The position numbers and the translations under genes are program-made. Below are positions 24,647 to 51,064 of a stretch of 64,000 nucleotides of DNA, in pieces (position 1 is the stretch's first letter; the number at the start of each line of letters is the position of its first letter). The stretch spans positions 62,001 through 126,000 of IMG/VR virus record IMGVR_UViG_3300025121_000282. One strand, given 5' to 3'. The notes below the pieces were generated by a model. That model was given only the letters and a program-made list of their open reading frames with translations, was not told the origin of the DNA and searched no databases.

Positions 24647-24968
24647 TGCCCGGTGAGGGAGTCGGACCCTCACGCTCTTGCGAGCGGCGGATTTTCTTCG
24701 CTCTACGAATTTCTTCGCTCTCCATTTTACTGGAGATTTGTGCGCTGGACTTTGTCTTCACCCGTTCTGGGTGGTCGCCGTTAAGTCTCTACACCTTCCT
24801 CCTTGTCAGGGAGGCTTGGCTCGGCGTTGTCTCGCTTCTTTTGAAGGAAGCAGGGAGTTCACCGAATTTGACGACATTCACTCTAGCCATTCCTGGCTAG
24901 GTGCTCAAATTGGATGTAGTCTCCATCCTACTTAAGTCCGCTGCGTCTACCGGTTTCGCCAACCGGGC
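24647..24968 (-). tRNA. trnL: tRNA-Leu(UAA), interrupted by group I intron
   Basis: Exons 24934-24968 and 24647-24695 join into a class II cloverleaf, anticodon loop CU-UAA-AA; no encoded CCA. Confidence 0.93.
24696..24933 (-). ncRNA. group I intron (IC3-like), 238 nt, in tRNA-Leu(UAA) after U34
   Basis: P/Q/R/S-like blocks AAATTCGGTGAA, CCGAGCCAAG, GAAGGTGTAGAGACT, AAAGTCCA; 5' exon ends in U, intron ends in G. Confidence 0.93.
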
Positions 24969-37686: not shown

Positions 37687-37769
37687 TGGAGCCGGGTGTG
37701 GGATTCGAACCCACGGTGTGGGATTCCGCCTTACAAGGGCGGTGCCGTCGACCGCTTGGCTAACCCGGC
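37687..37769 (-). tRNA. trnT: tRNA-Thr(UGU) with expanded variable region
   Basis: G1-C72/C2-G71, loop CU-UGU-AA, U73, CCA; 11-nt variable region. Confidence 0.85.
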
Positions 37770-39295: not shown

Positions 39296-39536
39296 CTGGA
39301 ACTCTTTCGAAAAACGATGGTTAGTGGGCTGAACTAGGAGACATCAACAGCCCCGTAGGAAGCACTCCTCAGTTTTAAAAAGGCGCGTTACGACAAGTTG
39401 GCACTCCAAGATGCGTACGCATTTGAAAACTAACCTGTCTTCCCTTTTGAAAAAGCACACCAGGAGGGACTCGAATAGAGTGGTAATCTTTTTACAGTTC
39501 ACTCTATTCAACCCCTATCAGCTTGTGGACCTGGAA

Positions 39537-40062
39537 ATGAAACTCACTAATTGTACTAACTGTGGTGACTCCACCACAAATCCAAGATTTTGTTCTAACT
39601 CGTGTTCGGCATCATGGGGCAACAAACTAAAGCCCCCATGTCCCAATGAAGAAGAAATGTAAACGTTGTGAAGTTATTATTCCCAGCAGAATAACTTATT
39701 GCACCAAATGTCAAGACCACTTTAAATCAAATACTAAGCGATGGAAAAACGAAACACTGGGTACACTACAGGCACGCCGAGTGTATCAGTCCAACTCACA
39801 AATTCGAGATGATGCTCGTGTGGTAGTGGACAAGCAGGGGTGGGTCAAATGCTGTGCGGTGTGTGAGTACTCTTTACACGTGCAAGTGTGTCACGTTAAA
39901 GCCATCAAAGACCACACGCCAGACACTATTATCTCGGCGATAAATGACCCATCCAACCTGATTTTGTTGTGTTCCAACCACCACTGGGAATTTGACCATG
40001 GCCTCTTGGACATTAAAGAAATTCGTGCTAGGCAGGGATCGAACCTGCGACCACTCGCTTAG
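39537..40062 (+). pseudogene. HNH endonuclease with N-terminal Zn finger, frameshifted at a C5 run (~39633)
   Basis: MKLTNCTNCG...FCSNSCS in one frame, then KKKCKRC...HVQVCH...NLILLCSNHHWEFD; 3' end overlaps tRNA-Arg. Confidence 0.75.
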
Positions 40063-40311
40063 CTTACCACTATAACTTTCGTTACTCTCTTGTGGAGATT
40101 TGTGGCCTGGACTTTGTCTTCACCCGTTCTGGGTGGCCCCCGTCAAGTCTCTACACCTTTTCCCGTTTAATAGGGAACTTGGCTCGGCGTTGTCTCGCTT
40201 CTTTTGAAGGAAGCAGGGAGTTCACCGAATTTGAGGGCATTCACACTAGACATTCCTATCTAGGTGCTCCTATTTCAAAGGCGAGCGCTCTATCCGCTGA
40301 GCTACTAGCAC
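40024..40311 (-). tRNA. trnR: tRNA-Arg(UCU), interrupted by group I intron
   Basis: Exons 40278-40311 and 40024-40062 give loop CU-UCU-AA; A20, G73; no CCA. Confidence 0.9.
40063..40277 (-). ncRNA. group I intron (IC3-like), 215 nt, in tRNA-Arg(UCU) after U34
   Basis: Same P/Q/R/S blocks as the Leu intron; terminal G; covarying P3. Confidence 0.9.
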
Positions 40312-40360
40312 ACAAAATCAATTTGAAAATAGTTACTAGGGAACAAAAGAAAGTTGAGTG

Positions 40361-40853: not shown

Positions 40854-41507
40854 CTATGTTTGAAGAATCTTGTCCCAACGCTCTGCTGCGTCTGGGGAAA
40901 TGGTTATTGCGTTCTTATACAAAGATGTTTCTTGCCAAGACCAAATATAACATGTGTCTGTGTACAAATCGTATGCAATAATAAAATCGAATTCATGGGA
41001 TTGGTATCTTTTACCCGGTTGTATCAGCTTGGTTTTGGCTAGAACTCTTGGGGCATGGATCAATCTAATAGCTGGCTGACCATGTCCCTTGTCTGACCTA
41101 GCAGTTTTAACTTGTACTTTCCATAGCTTATTAGTTTGGGGTAGGAACATTATTATGTCCACAGTGGCACAATCAAACACTGACTTGTATGTCTCAATAC
41201 CTCTAGCCAAAGCCCGCGCCATAACTGCACACTCTGACAAGCTTCCAATGTCACGACTAGTTAATTTAGCTCGGTCGATCGATTGGTGGAGCCAAGATTC
41301 CGTCCCACGTTCTTTTTTATTGCTGATTGTATGTGGGATGTGTTTGCTTTTTATCTCAGTTTCAGTGAGTGGGTGGTCTCTCAATAGTGCACTAAGTGCT
41401 CCCTTGGAAACCCCAGTCAGGCCCCTAATCTCATTAAGGGACCTACGTTCATCAGTCCTAAGACGCAGGCACTCGGCTCTAAGACTCTCATCTAAACGTG
41501 TAGCCAT
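40854..41507 (-). CDS. free-standing PD-(D/E)XK endonuclease (I-Ssp6803I/PDDEXK_5-like) with N-terminal HTH
   Basis: GSLSECAVMARAL...VDII...KVQVKT; N-terminal RSLNEIRGLTGVSKGALSALL. Confidence 0.75.
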   Translation of the reverse strand: MATRLDESLRAECLRLRTDERRSLNEIRGLTGVSKGALSALLRDHPLTETEIKSKHIPHTISNKKERGTESWLHQSIDRAKLTSRDIGSLSECAVMARALARGIETYKSVFDCATVDIIMFLPQTNKLWKVQVKTARSDKGHGQPAIRLIHAPRVLAKTKLIQPGKRYQSHEFDFIIAYDLYTDTCYIWSWQETSLYKNAITISPDAAERWDKILQT

Positions 41508-41563: not shown

Positions 41564-41669
41564 TTAAGTATCCCTATTGGGTTGTCAAAGACACCATTTT
41601 GCGTTTGAGCTTAATAAGACCGCTAGTGAGGCCCTTGAAAATCAGTGTGTAAGAGTGTAGGAACAGTCG

Positions 41670-41972
41670 TGCGCCCACCTGGACTTGAACCAGGAACCGT
41701 GGCGTTATGCAATCCACTTCGGCTTTCGCCGCTCTTCCGTTGCTGAAAGATTTGTGGTCTGGACTATCCCTTAACCGTGTTCCTTTATCGGAATTTAGGT
41801 TCTCCGTGTCTAGTCTCTACACCTTCCCTTTGCTTAAAGGGCTTGGCTCGGGATTGGCATCAGCATAACCTGTTAAGCGTTCCCCGAATTTACGGAGTTG
41901 TCACGCAAAAGTTTCCTTTTGCGCAGCCCTTAAACTCAAGCACCCCGCTCTGACCATTTGAGCTATGGGCGC
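41670..41972 (-). tRNA. tRNA(CAU), elongator Met or Ile2, interrupted by group I intron
   Basis: Exons 41939-41972 and 41670-41709; loop CU-CAU-AA; G1-C72 paired; no initiator GGG/CCC. Confidence 0.88.
41710..41938 (-). ncRNA. group I intron (IC3-like), 229 nt, after U33 of tRNA(CAU)
   Basis: AAATTCGGGGAA, CCCGAGCCAAG, GAAGGTGTAGAGACT, GATAGTCCA; P3 CTCCGT/ACGGAG; terminal G. Confidence 0.9.
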
Positions 41973-42207
41973 AAAAGTCCCTACACTCTTACACACCTGA
42001 TTTTTCACAGATCCCAATCAATTATTTAGGGAGTGGCACCACCCCGGTGTCAGGATTTCAGCAATGTTAGAACCGGGTCATTATAGCTGAACCTGTAGTG
42101 CGGGCCAGTTATAACCCTGTCACCTGCGTCAGTCCGAGGGGGTCAGGAACTCCTGGAGCAGCATTTCGCCCGGATTGACAAGAATTCGGTTCTTCGGGAG
42201 CATCGTT

Positions 42208-49094: not shown

Positions 49095-49593
49095 ACTCCA
49101 CCGTAATTTTTATAGTCTTCTCACCGGGCAATTTTATTCTTGTAATGTGCTTGTCTACATGTTCGGTACCCAAGCCGCCAGCGCCCCAATGAGAACCTAC
49201 TGCGCCAATTTCGGGTCCGTATGAGTGTGGTGGCACCAAATAGGCAGCTTGGCACATTATGTTGGAAGCCAGATAGTGTGTTAATGGTCTATCCGAGTCC
49301 CGTTTTGCAGCGGTGTTCCACTCTTCAAATGACCTACCGACAATCTTCTGAACTTCCTGGTCATTGGGGTTTAGCCTAGAAATATCAGTTGTTACCCTGT
49401 GCAAAGAGACACTTCCACCCTCTTTTGGTGGTGTTGGAAAGTCCTTGCTCAGTTCAACGGATTTTGTGTCCCAGTTATAAACAACCCAAAATGTTAACTG
49501 TCTCTCTTGCATTTGTACCACCTCTATACCATTATACAGAGGATTCTTTTTTATGTGTCGGAAGGGATATAAAAAATTTGGACCCCCTGTCAA
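49087..49593 (-). CDS. hypothetical protein
   Basis: 168 aa ORF; start uncertain. Confidence 0.5.
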   Translation of the reverse strand: MTGGPNFLYPFRHIKKNPLYNGIEVVQMQERQLTFWVVYNWDTKSVELSKDFPTPPKEGGSVSLHRVTTDISRLNPNDQEVQKIVGRSFEEWNTAAKRDSDRPLTHYLASNIMCQAAYLVPPHSYGPEIGAVGSHWGAGGLGTEHVDKHITRIKLPGEKTIKITVEYE

Positions 49594-51064
49594 CTTCTGA
49601 TTCCAATCTTATGGTGCCACCAAGTCTCTCTATTATCATTTTGGTCAAGTACAGCCCAACACCAGTACCTGGAAATTCTGTGGTCAGTCTCTCAAATAAC
49701 AAAAACAACTTTTTGTGATACACAGGGTCTATGCCCACCCCGTTATCTTCTACTACCACAACAGGTGCAAAACTTTGTGGGTCGGCGATGACATGTATTT
49801 TTACCATTTTTACAATACTTTTGTTAAATTTGAGACCGTTATCTATGAGATTGTTGAAGGCCTCTGTTAAAAGTGTTTGATCTCCCAACACCATAGGAAG
49901 GTCTGAACTTATTTTTATGTAACAATCTGAGGCTTCTCTACAGTACGCCAGCCTCATAGGCCTGAGTATGGTGTTCAGGTCTACTGGAAGCGCCTTCATA
50001 TTTTTTAATTTTCGTATGTCAGACACCTTGTGGAGACCATCTATTATGTCGGATAGCAGTACTGCATCTTGTTTTATGTCCGTAATGTACTCTTGCATCC
50101 CATCTGGAAGTTTAAAGTCTTCCTCTATTATCTGCGCAGCACCCAAGATGCTGCGAGGCGGACTTCTTAATTGGTGTGCTGCCACATTAGCAAAACCAGA
50201 TAAAGCAACATTCGCCTGTTCTAGCTCGTGTATGGTGTTTTTTAGGTGTTCTTGTTGTTTGACAAACTCAGTCAGGTTCGTTGCGCTCATGTACATACCC
50301 CCGGATTGGCGGTCCCGGGTTATACTCCACAATAAGTGTACCCTGTTACCATTGGCTGTTCGTGTTTTTGCTTTTGCTCTTGTTATTTTTGTAAAACTGT
50401 CCACCTCCTCTTCCTCAAATTCTTCCTCAAATTCTTCCTCAAATTCTATCCATTCTTTCCACGGTCTACTTGTCAATTCTAGTTCTGACCGCCCCAATAG
50501 CTGTTGGAGGCCCTTACTTACAAAAGACCATTTCTCAAGATCAGTGGGTCGAGTCGTGGCAACCAACTCTAGCCCCACTAATAACCAGTACTTGAGGTCT
50601 ATGTCCCTTTTGTGGTGTTCGCTTATATCCCTTGCTGTAGCATATACCTGAGTTCCATCAGACGCAGCCGTCCATTCCAGGTATACTTCTGCCTTGTCTT
50701 TTCGTATGTATCTGTTTACAAATCCCATCGTGTGGTGGTCTATATTTTGTAGCGCAACAGCTTCTTTTATAGTCTTCTCTCTGTCTTGTGGGTGTACAAA
50801 GTTAATAAGTGGTTTTGACTTGAGTTCCTCTAATGAGTACCCAATAGTTTTAACCCACCCTTTAGACAAAAATGTGAACACACCATTTGAGACGGTGCAA
50901 TGCAAATCACTAGAACTGTTAAACCATTTGTCCAGTAGTTCTTTTTGATTTTTGTACTCTAAAGATTTTTTGTAATATTCTGTTTTTTTAAGCCAAAAAA
51001 GAAAATACGGTAATACCAACAAAAATAGCAACACCCAGTCATGGAACTCTAATTCTTGAATCAT
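49532..51064 (-). CDS. membrane-anchored PAS-domain sensor histidine kinase
   Basis: TM helix, PAS (LGYSLEEL...VHPQDRE), H-box AAHQLRSP, N-box NLIDNGLKF, DNGVGI, GTGVGL. Confidence 0.9.
   Translation of the reverse strand: MIQELEFHDWVLLFLLVLPYFLFWLKKTEYYKKSLEYKNQKELLDKWFNSSSDLHCTVSNGVFTFLSKGWVKTIGYSLEELKSKPLINFVHPQDREKTIKEAVALQNIDHHTMGFVNRYIRKDKAEVYLEWTAASDGTQVYATARDISEHHKRDIDLKYWLLVGLELVATTRPTDLEKWSFVSKGLQQLLGRSELELTSRPWKEWIEFEEEFEEEFEEEEVDSFTKITRAKAKTRTANGNRVHLLWSITRDRQSGGMYMSATNLTEFVKQQEHLKNTIHELEQANVALSGFANVAAHQLRSPPRSILGAAQIIEEDFKLPDGMQEYITDIKQDAVLLSDIIDGLHKVSDIRKLKNMKALPVDLNTILRPMRLAYCREASDCYIKISSDLPMVLGDQTLLTEAFNNLIDNGLKFNKSIVKMVKIHVIADPQSFAPVVVVEDNGVGIDPVYHKKLFLLFERLTTEFPGTGVGLYLTKMIIERLGGTIRLESEVDRGSKFFISLPTHKKESSV
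50409..50446. repeat. 12-bp tandem repeat (about 3 copies) encoding EFEE in the kinase linker
   Basis: (tcttcctcaaat)n gives EFEEEFEEEFEEEE. Confidence 0.8.

What the first reader, a model, noticed from the sequence alone, without database searches (positions are those of the whole stretch)
41670..41972. Intron after U33 in a non-initiator CAU tRNA (Met or Ile2)
The spliced tRNA has a paired G1-C72 and lacks the GGG/CCC initiator anticodon stem. C4-G69 and C5-G68 are compatible with TilS-type Ile2 recognition. The intron lies between positions 33 and 34. From recollection this is the cyanobacterial fMet intron position, whereas the Azoarcus Ile(CAU) intron follows the anticodon. This third intron is clearly more divergent from the other two, which points to an independent acquisition.
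Basis: partly seen in the sequence, partly recalled or inferred. Interest (0 to 1): 0.65.

Follow-up and report, generated by a model that had tools for sequence, protein, structure and literature searches.

The report
Phage tRNA-Ile2 gene with self-splicing intron
A 315-kb groundwater phage carries a tRNA gene, most likely the AUA-reading isoleucine tRNA, split between U33 and C34 by a small self-splicing group I intron; this arrangement is real but is already catalogued and common in bacteria.

Summary
On the minus strand, 41972-41670 is a tRNA(CAU) gene: 5' exon 41972-41939, a 229-nt ORF-less group I intron 41938-41710, and 3' exon 41709-41670. The splice site lies between U33 and C34.

The tRNA is not an initiator (G1-C72, C11-G24, no GGG/CCC). 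It is most likely tRNA-Ile2:
- It has G3-C70, a published negative mark for Met and fMet, plus C4-G69 and C5-G68.
- The phage encodes a 197-aa TilS catalytic domain.
- AUA is its commonest Ile codon.

Williams 2020 (bioRxiv) already lists Met.2Ug and Ile2.2Ug. My capped scan found about 70 bacterial species and three further distinct phage sequences with this site in Ile2-like tRNAs.

"Independent acquisition" is favoured but not proven. The intron is 55-59% identical to the Leu(UAA) and Arg(UCU) introns of the window, which are 83% identical to each other (AU test p = 0.07).

New context:
- A free-standing I-Ssp6803I-family endonuclease gene lies 162 nt downstream.
- A conserved 20-bp RNA stem brackets the tRNA.

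Splicing, lysidine formation and cleavage are all untested.

The parts
41977..41996 (-). 5' arm of a 20-bp stem bracketing the tRNA. It ends 4 nt before tRNA position 1.
   Evidence: Inverted repeat, 20 nt, 95% complementary. It is the only tRNA of 11 in the genome with such flanks. The one mismatch is a G.U pair on the tRNA-sense strand only. A relative (L011) keeps the stem through one compensatory change (A-U to G-C) and two more wobbles.
41939..41972 (-). 5' exon, tRNA positions 1-33: acceptor GCGCCCA, D arm, anticodon stem GGGUG, C32, U33.
   Evidence: Read directly from the sequence. Best-scoring ARAGORN join.
41710..41938 (-). ORF-less group I intron, 229 nt, of the bacterial tRNA-intron (IC3-like) type.
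   Evidence: Rfam RF00028, 40.9 bits, E 6.9e-9. Conserved core blocks match those in Williams' alignment. Helices are recovered by RNAfold.
41926..41941 (-). P1. Exon G31, C32, U33 plus intron U1 (41941-41938) pair with the internal guide GGGC (41929-41926). U33.G is the splice-site wobble. The adjacent UUUAAG (41934-41929) can pair with the 3' exon C34 and U36-A38 as P10.
   Evidence: Read from the sequence. The same CU|U / GGG core occurs in phage relatives L005, L008 and L092, with covariation at position 31. P10 is an inference: 4 of 5 pairs.
41902..41925 (-). P2 hairpin, 10 bp with a GAAA tetraloop.
   Evidence: The GAAA-capped P2 is typical of the family alignment.
41761..41897 (-). Catalytic core P3-P8. 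It includes AAAUUCGGGGAA, AAUCCCGAGCCAAG, GGUGUAGAGACUAGAC and AAGGGAUAGUCC.
   Evidence: Rfam alignment, coordinates and the family alignment.
41710..41757 (-). P9 domain: CCAC/GUGG enclosing two hairpins, one GAAA-capped. It is followed by AUU and the terminal omega-G at 41710.
   Evidence: The spacing from P9 to omega-G is as in family members.
41670..41709 (-). 3' exon, tRNA positions 34-73: CAU anticodon, A37, A38, CGCCA, 5-nt variable loop, T arm, UGGGCGC, A73.
41645..41664 (-). 3' arm of the bracketing stem. It starts 5 nt after A73.
40854..41507 (-). Free-standing 217-aa gene: an N-terminal helix-turn-helix-like part plus an I-Ssp6803I-family PD-(D/E)XK endonuclease domain. It lies 162 nt downstream of the tRNA and 7 nt upstream of tRNA-Val(UAC).
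   Evidence: Pfam PF11645, 37 bits against a cut-off of 26.1. A profile of 5 homologues hits PDB 2OST (I-Ssp6803I) at E 1.1e-9. The AlphaFold model (pLDDT 74.6) matches 2OST in Foldseek at E 2e-8, TM 0.74. It is the only copy in the genome.

Best explanation
This is a phage-encoded tRNA-Ile2 gene. Its anticodon CAU is read as lysidine-AU after modification and decodes AUA. The gene is interrupted between U33 and C34 by an ORF-less, IC3-like self-splicing group I intron.

Proposed pathway:
1. The gene is transcribed as part of a long minus-strand transcript of small ORFs and tRNAs. This is inferred; no promoter or terminator was found nearby.
2. A conserved 20-bp stem formed by the flanks probably directs excision of the precursor, for example by RNase III (inferred).
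3. The intron folds and pairs G31-C32-U33 with its guide GGGC. Exogenous G attacks after U33, and omega-G (41710) then directs ligation to C34. This mechanism is inferred from the family; the structural elements themselves are shown.
4. Only after splicing does a normal anticodon loop exist. C34 is then converted to lysidine by the phage's own 197-aa TilS catalytic domain (outside the window, G000:C1:135533-136126) and/or by the host TilS. IleRS charges the tRNA (inferred).
5. The tRNA supplies AUA decoding, and AUA is the phage's most used Ile codon.

The intron was most likely acquired separately from the Leu(UAA)/Arg(UCU) intron pair of the same genome. Its maintenance is probably tied to the I-Ssp6803I-family endonuclease gene just downstream. 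In that model the endonuclease cuts intron-less CAU tRNA genes while the intron disrupts the site in its own genome.
For: Anatomy and intron:
- Sequence reading and joins.

Not an initiator:
- G1-C72, C11-G24, U12-A23, and no GGG/CCC.

Ile2 rather than Met:
- G3-C70. Silva et al. 2006 report G3/A3/C70/T70 as complete negative discriminators of Met and fMet, and C4-G69 and C5-G68 as frequent in Ile(CAT).
- All 8 intron-bearing CAU tRNAs found in viral contigs have G3 or A3.
- The tRNA is 78-81% identical to bacterial Ile2-like tRNAs of the GGGCCCA...UGGGCCCA type.
- The phage encodes a protein that passes NCBIfam TIGR02432 lysidine_TilS_N, 95.7 bits against a cut-off of 93.6. It has the SGGVDS PP-loop, and its only PDB hits are TilS structures 3A2K and 1NI5.
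- ATA makes up 40% of Ile codons, 23.7 per 1000, above ATG at 19.6.
- This is the only CAU tRNA in the genome. The other phage tRNAs mostly read A-ending codons: UAA, UUC, UGA, UUG, UGU, UAC, UCU.

Separate origin of the intron:
-.

Link to the endonuclease:
-.
- PF11645 genes sit inside fMet.2Ug introns in two Omnitrophota genomes.
- PF11645 genes also sit free-standing, directly downstream on the same strand, of ORF-less 2Ug introns in three further bacterial genomes.

Flanking stem:
-.
Against: - No RNA evidence of splicing. RNA runs held only conserved-core fragments from other organisms.
- The Rfam score is below the gathering threshold.
- P1 is only 4 bp, and P10 has an A.A mismatch.
- G29-C41 differs from the C29-G41 seen in nearly all bacterial Ile2-like tRNAs. 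From memory, C29-G41 is an E. coli IleRS determinant. G27.A43 is unpaired.
- TilS passes its cut-off by only 2 bits and lacks the C-terminal tRNA-binding domains.
- tRNAscan-SE isotype models were not available.
- Other homologues of the endonuclease sit in phage tRNA arrays next to non-CAU tRNAs. The close relative L011 keeps the endonuclease next to an intron-less CAU tRNA-like gene. The endonuclease may therefore target something other than the intron site.
- No intron-less allele of this tRNA was found.
Confidence: 0.72

Rival explanations
1. The spliced product is an elongator tRNA-Met reading AUG, not Ile2. The phage TilS homologue would then act on a host tRNA or have another role.
For: - An unmodified CAU anticodon with A73 is the main MetRS identity set (established knowledge).
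- Met.2Ug introns exist.
- G29-C41 is unlike most Ile2-like tRNAs.
Against: - G3-C70 is reported as absent from Met and fMet genes in 234 genomes.
- C2-G71/G3-C70 is the reverse of the G2-C71/C3-G70 of E. coli tRNA-Met (from memory).
- The phage has a TilS domain, and AUA is its top Ile codon.
- A phage gains little from an extra AUG elongator.
Confidence: 0.12
2. The gene is a decaying remnant. The intron no longer splices efficiently, so no functional tRNA is made.
For: - The Rfam score is below gathering.
- P1 is short, the anticodon stem has G27.A43, and no CCA is encoded.
- The neighbourhood is a mosaic with a tRNA remnant.
Against: - All core blocks, the U.G wobble, omega-G and all tRNA helices are intact.
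- The locus is 100% identical in an independent contig and is held in runs from four studies.
- The bracketing stem is conserved by compensatory change.
- Both other tRNA introns of the window also score below gathering, at 45.1 and 35 bits, and none of Rfam's seed sequences is bacterial. The low score therefore reflects the model.
Confidence: 0.08
3. The downstream endonuclease is unrelated to the intron. It would be a free-standing homing gene of phage tRNA arrays that cuts an intergenic or neighbouring tRNA site, as T4 SegB does. The intron would persist on its own.
For: - Homologues P0003 and P0004 lie between Ala/Ala and Gln/Ile(GAU) tRNA genes, with no CAU intron beside them.
- L011 carries the endonuclease next to an intron-less CAU tRNA-like gene.
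- SegB is a precedent (PMC2330249, abstract).
Against: - The family's founding member cuts the anticodon region of a CAU tRNA gene at this very intron site.
- In bacteria, PF11645 genes recur inside or immediately downstream of 2Ug CAU introns: 5 clear cases among 120 loci of up to 8 kb, plus two weak ones.
Confidence: 0.4

Closest known systems
Ile2.2Ug and Met.2Ug group I introns of bacterial tRNA genes (Williams 2020, bioRxiv 10.1101/2020.01.27.920355; seeds Gba28.Ile2.2Ug, Sba135.Met.2Ug)
   Same: Same insertion site (after U33), U(-1)/omega-G rule, same conserved core blocks, GAAA-capped P2 and P9 architecture. My scan found this type in about 70 bacterial species.
   Different: - This copy is in a phage genome.
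- The seeds' introns begin with CA, mimicking the anticodon; this one begins with U, giving a CU|U / GGG P1.
- The anticodon stem has G29-C41 rather than C29-G41.
Synechocystis PCC 6803 tRNA-fMet intron encoding I-Ssp6803I (Biniszkiewicz 1994; Bonocora and Shub 2001; Zhao 2007; PDB 2OST)
   Same: Same intron site in a CAU tRNA (fMet.2Ug). Same endonuclease family.
   Different: - The host tRNA here is an elongator of the Ile2 type, not an initiator.
- The intron is ORF-less: 229 nt against 655 nt.
- The endonuclease gene lies outside the intron, 162 nt downstream, and carries an extra N-terminal part of about 80 aa.
Azoarcus tRNA-Ile(CAU) intron (Ile2.5Ug)
   Same: An Ile2-type tRNA interrupted by a small ORF-less IC3 intron.
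   Different: The Azoarcus intron follows U36. That type also occurs in phages: L085, L106, L121 and the unannotated gene in Klebsiella phage Muenster.
Phage T4 tRNA cluster with tRNA-Ile(CAU) and the free-standing homing endonuclease SegB (PMC2330249)
   Same: A phage tRNA set for A-ending codons, including an AUA reader (from memory). A free-standing homing endonuclease gene sits inside the tRNA cluster.
   Different: T4 tRNA genes have no introns. SegB is a GIY-YIG enzyme, not PD-(D/E)XK.
Cyanophage psbA intron with the adjacent free-standing endonuclease F-CphI ('collaborative homing'; Zeng, Bonocora and Shub 2009; from memory)
   Same: An ORF-less group I intron with a separate endonuclease gene next to the interrupted gene. 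The intron is thought to protect the cut site.
   Different: That case is a protein-coding gene with a different endonuclease family. Cleavage at the intron site is shown there and untested here.

Membership tests
Group I intron (bacterial tRNA, IC3-like) | Conserved catalytic core (P3-P8) detectable by a covariance model | tested here: met
   RF00028 scores 40.9 bits, E 6.9e-9, spanning model positions 1-253. This is below Rfam's gathering score of 50. The window's other two tRNA introns are also below it. Williams used cut-offs of 18-20 bits.
Group I intron (bacterial tRNA, IC3-like) | U at -1 in a U.G wobble within P1, and G at the 3' end (omega-G) | tested here: met
   U33 pairs with the G at 41928 within GCUU/GGGC. 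The intron ends in G at 41710. P1 position 31 covaries in relatives.
Group I intron (bacterial tRNA, IC3-like) | Self-splicing activity | not testable with these tools
   RNA runs gave no coverage of the exons.
tRNA-Ile2 (lysidine, AUA-reading) | CAU anticodon without initiator marks (C1xA72, A11-U24, GGG/CCC) | tested here: met
   G1-C72, C11-G24, and GUG/CGC at 29-31/39-41.
tRNA-Ile2 (lysidine, AUA-reading) | Acceptor stem that excludes Met (G3/A3 or C70/T70) with C4-G69 and C5-G68 | tested here: met
   Acceptor GCGCCCA/UGGGCGC gives G3-C70, C4-G69 and C5-G68. The rule is from Silva 2006.
tRNA-Ile2 (lysidine, AUA-reading) | C29-G41, an E. coli IleRS determinant (from memory) seen in most bacterial Ile2-like tRNAs | tested here: not met
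   G29-C41 here. Determinants are known to vary between lineages.
tRNA-Ile2 (lysidine, AUA-reading) | Isotype-specific covariance model score (tRNAscan-SE 2) | not tested
The joined exons were not sent to any search tool.
tRNA-Ile2 (lysidine, AUA-reading) | Lysidine at position 34 and charging by IleRS | not testable with these tools
   Indirect support only: a phage TilS domain and high AUA use.
Initiator tRNA-fMet | C1xA72 mismatch, A11-U24 and three G-C pairs at 29-31/39-41 | tested here: not met
   None of the three is present.
I-Ssp6803I family homing endonuclease (PF11645) | Sequence and fold match to the family | tested here: met
   Pfam 37 bits against a cut-off of 26.1. Profile against 2OST, E 1.1e-9. 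Foldseek against 2OST, E 2e-8, TM 0.74.
I-Ssp6803I family homing endonuclease (PF11645) | Catalytic D ... (E/Q)xK residues | tested here: inconclusive
   D117 is invariant among the five homologues. The K-V-Q-V-K stretch aligns with KVQVK of 2OST. Residue roles were not checked on the structure.
I-Ssp6803I family homing endonuclease (PF11645) | Encoded inside the intron whose site it cuts | tested here: not met
   The gene is free-standing, 162 nt downstream. The same free-standing layout occurs in L257, L214 and L249.
I-Ssp6803I family homing endonuclease (PF11645) | Cuts the anticodon region of an intron-less CAU tRNA gene | not testable with these tools
No intron-less allele was found.
TilS (tRNA-Ile lysidine synthetase) | N-terminal PP-loop catalytic domain | tested here: met
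   TIGR02432, 95.7 bits against a cut-off of 93.6. SGGVDS motif. The only PDB hits are 3A2K and 1NI5.
TilS (tRNA-Ile lysidine synthetase) | C-terminal tRNA-binding domains | tested here: not met
   The protein is only 197 aa. The full-length model NF007942 scores 34 bits against a cut-off of 606. Similar short forms are annotated as TilS in Pseudomonas phage PA5oct and its relatives.

The most novel reading that the evidence does not exclude
The ORF-less intron and the free-standing I-Ssp6803I-family endonuclease 162 nt downstream form a two-part ('collaborative') homing unit for CAU tRNA genes. The enzyme would cut intron-less tRNA(CAU) genes at the anticodon loop, while the intron splits and so protects the site in its own genome.

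The same split layout recurs in Omnitrophota and Chloroflexota genomes, alongside the intron-encoded layout. If real, this would show both stages of endonuclease capture by an intron in one family. It would also extend that family from cyanobacterial fMet genes to phage Ile2 genes.

The 20-bp bracketing stem would be a second new element: a processing signal for an intron-bearing tRNA.
Probability: 0.3. Interest if true: 0.6.

Novelty: new member of a known kind. Interest (0 to 1): 0.38.

Why it matters
The finding as stated is ordinary. This intron site in Ile2 and Met tRNAs is already catalogued and proves widespread.

The value lies in the context:
- Group I introns in phage tRNA genes seem hardly documented. 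No paper in the held library describes them. Yet one core pattern retrieved 69 intron-split tRNA genes from viral contigs. An unannotated example sits in cultured Klebsiella and E. coli jumbo phages, which gives a laboratory system.
- This phage combines a split AUA-reading tRNA, its own minimal TilS and heavy AUA use. Decoding of its commonest Ile codon may therefore depend on a ribozyme step followed by a phage-encoded modification.
- The neighbouring I-Ssp6803I-like gene offers a testable case of how introns and homing endonucleases come to be associated.

Tried and rejected
- **ARAGORN intron mode.** It gave wrong joins: 'tRNA-Ala(tgc)' of 96 nt for this gene and 'tRNA-Gln' for the Arg gene. 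I replaced it by scoring every U(-1)/omega-G join.
- **Splicing evidence from reads.** The phage DNA is held in groundwater and soil runs from four studies. The one metatranscriptome of the same study held nothing. Wastewater RNA runs held only 30-80-nt core fragments from other organisms.
- **Intron-less allele.** An exact 28-mer of the 3' exon was found only in the phage's own contig and in one identical 3.7-kb contig.
- **Flank-stem arm pattern in viral contigs.** Three chance hits in coding DNA, with no second arm.
- **Endonuclease against PDB.** The single sequence gave no hit. A 5-sequence profile was needed.
- **Larger intron tree** (114 rows). Mostly unresolved. The nearest neighbour is a gammaproteobacterial Ile2.2Ug intron at 88/37 support.
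- **TAG recoding.** Prompted by a tRNA(CUA); no signal was found.
- **Promoter and terminator scan.** Nothing near the gene.
- **Automated P1 search.** It picked a spurious site inside the core for this intron, so the manual P1 was kept.
- **Not done.** The joined (spliced) sequence was not sent to any search tool. Only the 3' exon was searched, as a 28-mer; the 5' exon was not searched. The join existed only inside local scripts. tRNAscan-SE was not available. The large protein-representative search was not used.
- **Host.** Not identified.

Full report
**Source.** The window is bases 62001-126000 of a 314,886-bp IMG/VR virus record. The record has 47% G+C and is rated complete by CheckV. It is a jumbo phage found in groundwater and soil metagenomes. 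The region is a run of small minus-strand ORFs interspersed with tRNA genes.

**Observation.**
- On the minus strand, 41972-41939 and 41709-41670 are the two halves of a tRNA with anticodon CAU. They are separated by 229 nt.
- Rfam's group I model matches the insert at 40.9 bits, E 6.9e-9. This is below its gathering score of 50. The other two tRNA introns of the window are also below it, at 45.1 and 35 bits.
- The insert carries the sequence blocks and helices of the bacterial tRNA-intron family as aligned by Williams. These include a GAAA-capped P2, AAAUUCGGGGAA, AAUCCCGAGCCAAG, GGUGUAGAGACUAGAC, AAGGGAUAGUCC, and a P9 domain followed by three bases ending in G.
- RNAfold alone recovers P2, P3, P4, P6a, P8 and P9.

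**Splice sites.**
- U33 pairs with a G inside GCUU/GGGC. The intron ends in G at 41710.
- The loop UUUAAG can pair with C34 and U36-A38 of the 3' exon.
- Among all U/G joins, ARAGORN scores the CAU, site-2 join best: 121.3 against 116.3 for the next.
- Related phage introns keep the CU|U / GGG core, while position 31 changes G-C, U-A and A-U.

**Which CAU tRNA.**
- Initiator marks are absent: G1-C72, C11-G24, and GUG/CGC instead of GGG/CCC.
- Silva et al. 2006 classified 1070 CAT tRNA genes. They report that G3, A3, C70 or T70 exclude Met and fMet, and that C4-G69 and C5-G68 are frequent in Ile(CAT). This tRNA has G3-C70, C4-G69 and C5-G68.
- It is 78-81% identical to bacterial tRNAs of the GGGCCCA.../...UGGGCCCA type that carry the same marks.
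- The genome gives three further independent supports:
  - It encodes a 197-aa protein at G000:C1:135533-136126, outside the window. The protein passes NCBIfam lysidine_TilS_N (95.7 against 93.6 bits). It has the SGGVDS PP-loop and hits only TilS structures in the PDB.
  - ATA is the commonest Ile codon: 40% of Ile codons, 23.7 per 1000.
  - This is the only CAU tRNA, in a set dominated by readers of A-ending codons.
- Against Ile2: G29-C41 rather than C29-G41, the marginal TilS score, and the missing TilS C-terminal domains.
- I put Ile2 at about 0.8, Met at about 0.12 and initiator near zero.
- tRNAscan-SE isotype models were not available. The joined sequence was examined only in local scripts and was not sent to any search tool.

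**Is the site known?**
- Williams 2020 names four classical bacterial types: Leu.3Ug, Arg.5Ug, fMet.2Ug and Ile2.5Ug. He adds 17 new ones. His seed alignment includes Sba135.Met.2Ug and Gba28.Ile2.2Ug.
The site is nonetheless already catalogued for both Met and Ile2.
- 83 of those loci could be resolved. 70 are Ile2-like by the G3/A3 rule: Chloroflexota 22, Peregrinibacteria 13, Altimarinota/Gracilibacteria 7, Bacillota 5, and others. 11 are fMet-like. The rule is crude for a few odd cases such as L249.
- In viral contigs the same site occurs in L005/L007, L008 and L092, all with G3.

**Independent acquisition.**
- The CAU intron is 55% and 59% identical to the Leu(UAA) and Arg(UCU) introns of the window. 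Those two are 83% identical to each other.
- In a 57-row tree the Leu and Arg introns are sisters (98/96). They sit inside a 47-row clade (90/84) that excludes the CAU intron.
- Forcing all three together costs 31 lnL units, p-AU 0.073. Grouping the CAU intron with the L005/L007/L008 introns raises the likelihood by 9.3.
- A larger tree is unresolved.
- Separate origin is favoured but not demonstrated.

**Neighbouring endonuclease.**
- The ORF 41507-40854 lies 162 nt after the tRNA and 7 nt before tRNA-Val(UAC). It matches Pfam PF11645.
- A profile of its five homologues hits PDB 2OST, the homing endonuclease I-Ssp6803I, at E 1.1e-9. Its AlphaFold model matches 2OST at Foldseek E 2e-8, TM 0.74.
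- I-Ssp6803I is encoded inside the tRNA-fMet intron of Synechocystis. It cuts the anticodon region of intron-less tRNA-fMet genes. That is the same site.
- Here the gene is outside an ORF-less intron.
- The same family occurs inside fMet.2Ug introns of two Omnitrophota genomes (L155, L184).
- It also occurs free-standing, directly downstream on the same strand, of ORF-less 2Ug introns in L257 and L214 (Omnitrophota) and L249 (Chloroflexota). L249 has an HTH plus nuclease layout like the phage protein.
- This recurrence argues for a functional link.
- Against a link: other homologues lie in phage tRNA arrays beside non-CAU tRNAs. The close relative L011 also has the endonuclease next to an intron-less CAU tRNA-like gene.

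**Flanking stem.**
- A 20-nt inverted repeat brackets the tRNA, 4 nt before position 1 and 5 nt after A73. None of the other ten tRNAs of the genome has such flanks.
- Its single mismatch is a G.U pair on the tRNA-sense strand only.
- In L011 the arms persist around a different gene. One change is compensatory (A-U to G-C) and two more are wobble pairs.
- This points to an RNA helix of RNase III size. A processing role is an inference.

**Verdict.** This is a real, correctly described intron-split tRNA, most likely tRNA-Ile2. It is a new phage member of an already catalogued kind. The side observations deserve more attention than the original claim: the free-standing I-Ssp6803I-like gene, the minimal TilS, the bracketing stem, and the abundance of tRNA introns in phages.

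Noticed in passing
window 24647-24968 (-) and 40023-40312 (-): tRNA-Leu(UAA) carries a 238-nt intron at 24696-24933. tRNA-Arg(UCU) carries a 215-nt intron at 40063-40277. Both introns lie between positions 34 and 35. They are 83% identical and are sisters in the tree (98/96). This suggests recent spread of one intron between two different tRNA genes within this phage lineage.
   Followed up: partly
window 39646-40062 (+): A 138-aa ORF with a zinc-finger-like N-terminus and an HNH_2 domain (PF13391, 39 bits). It is antisense to the tRNAs. Its last 40 nt overlap the 3' exon of the intron-bearing tRNA-Arg(UCU), and its stop codon lies at the exon/intron boundary.
   Followed up: partly
window 39446-39475 (-); L011 3073-3147: The 3' remnant of a second, different tRNA-Arg(UCU). 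That gene is intact and intron-less in the close relative L011. The flanks of the two phages are 96-100% identical, while the tRNA/endonuclease block between them is mosaic. This signals repeated replacement of tRNA genes.
   Followed up: partly
L011 922-997: In the relative, the same bracketing stem encloses an intron-less 76-nt tRNA-like gene. It has a perfect acceptor stem and a CUCAUAA anticodon loop, but no D arm and a 20-nt variable region. ARAGORN and Rfam do not call it.
   Followed up: no
L258 373-887 (= Klebsiella phage Muenster MT708547.1, about 302709-303223): An unannotated tRNA(CAU) gene with acceptor GGCCCCU and an encoded CCA. It is split after U36 by a group I intron of about 240 nt, the Azoarcus-type position. 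It lies between the annotated tRNA-Asn and tRNA-Ser. The same core hit occurs in six other Klebsiella and E. coli phage records.
   Followed up: partly
L138, L171, L180, L211, L199 and about 15 more bacterial loci: Bacterial Ile2.2Ug introns of about 600-620 nt carry a conserved ORF of 125-150 aa on the antisense strand. It has a zinc finger and a weak HNH match (L211: 24.1 bits against a cut-off of 21.4). This is a different endonuclease solution at the same site.
   Followed up: partly
G000:C1:284600-284674 (-), outside the window: A tRNA with anticodon CUA, an amber suppressor type. ORF statistics show no sign that TAG is recoded.
   Followed up: partly
window 49532-51064 (-): A 510-aa PAS, HisKA and HATPase_c sensor histidine kinase encoded by the phage.
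   Followed up: no
window 37687-37769 (-): tRNA-Thr(UGU) is 83 nt long and has a 7-nt insertion in the variable region relative to the Rfam model.
   Followed up: no
tRNA introns are therefore common in phages.
   Followed up: partly
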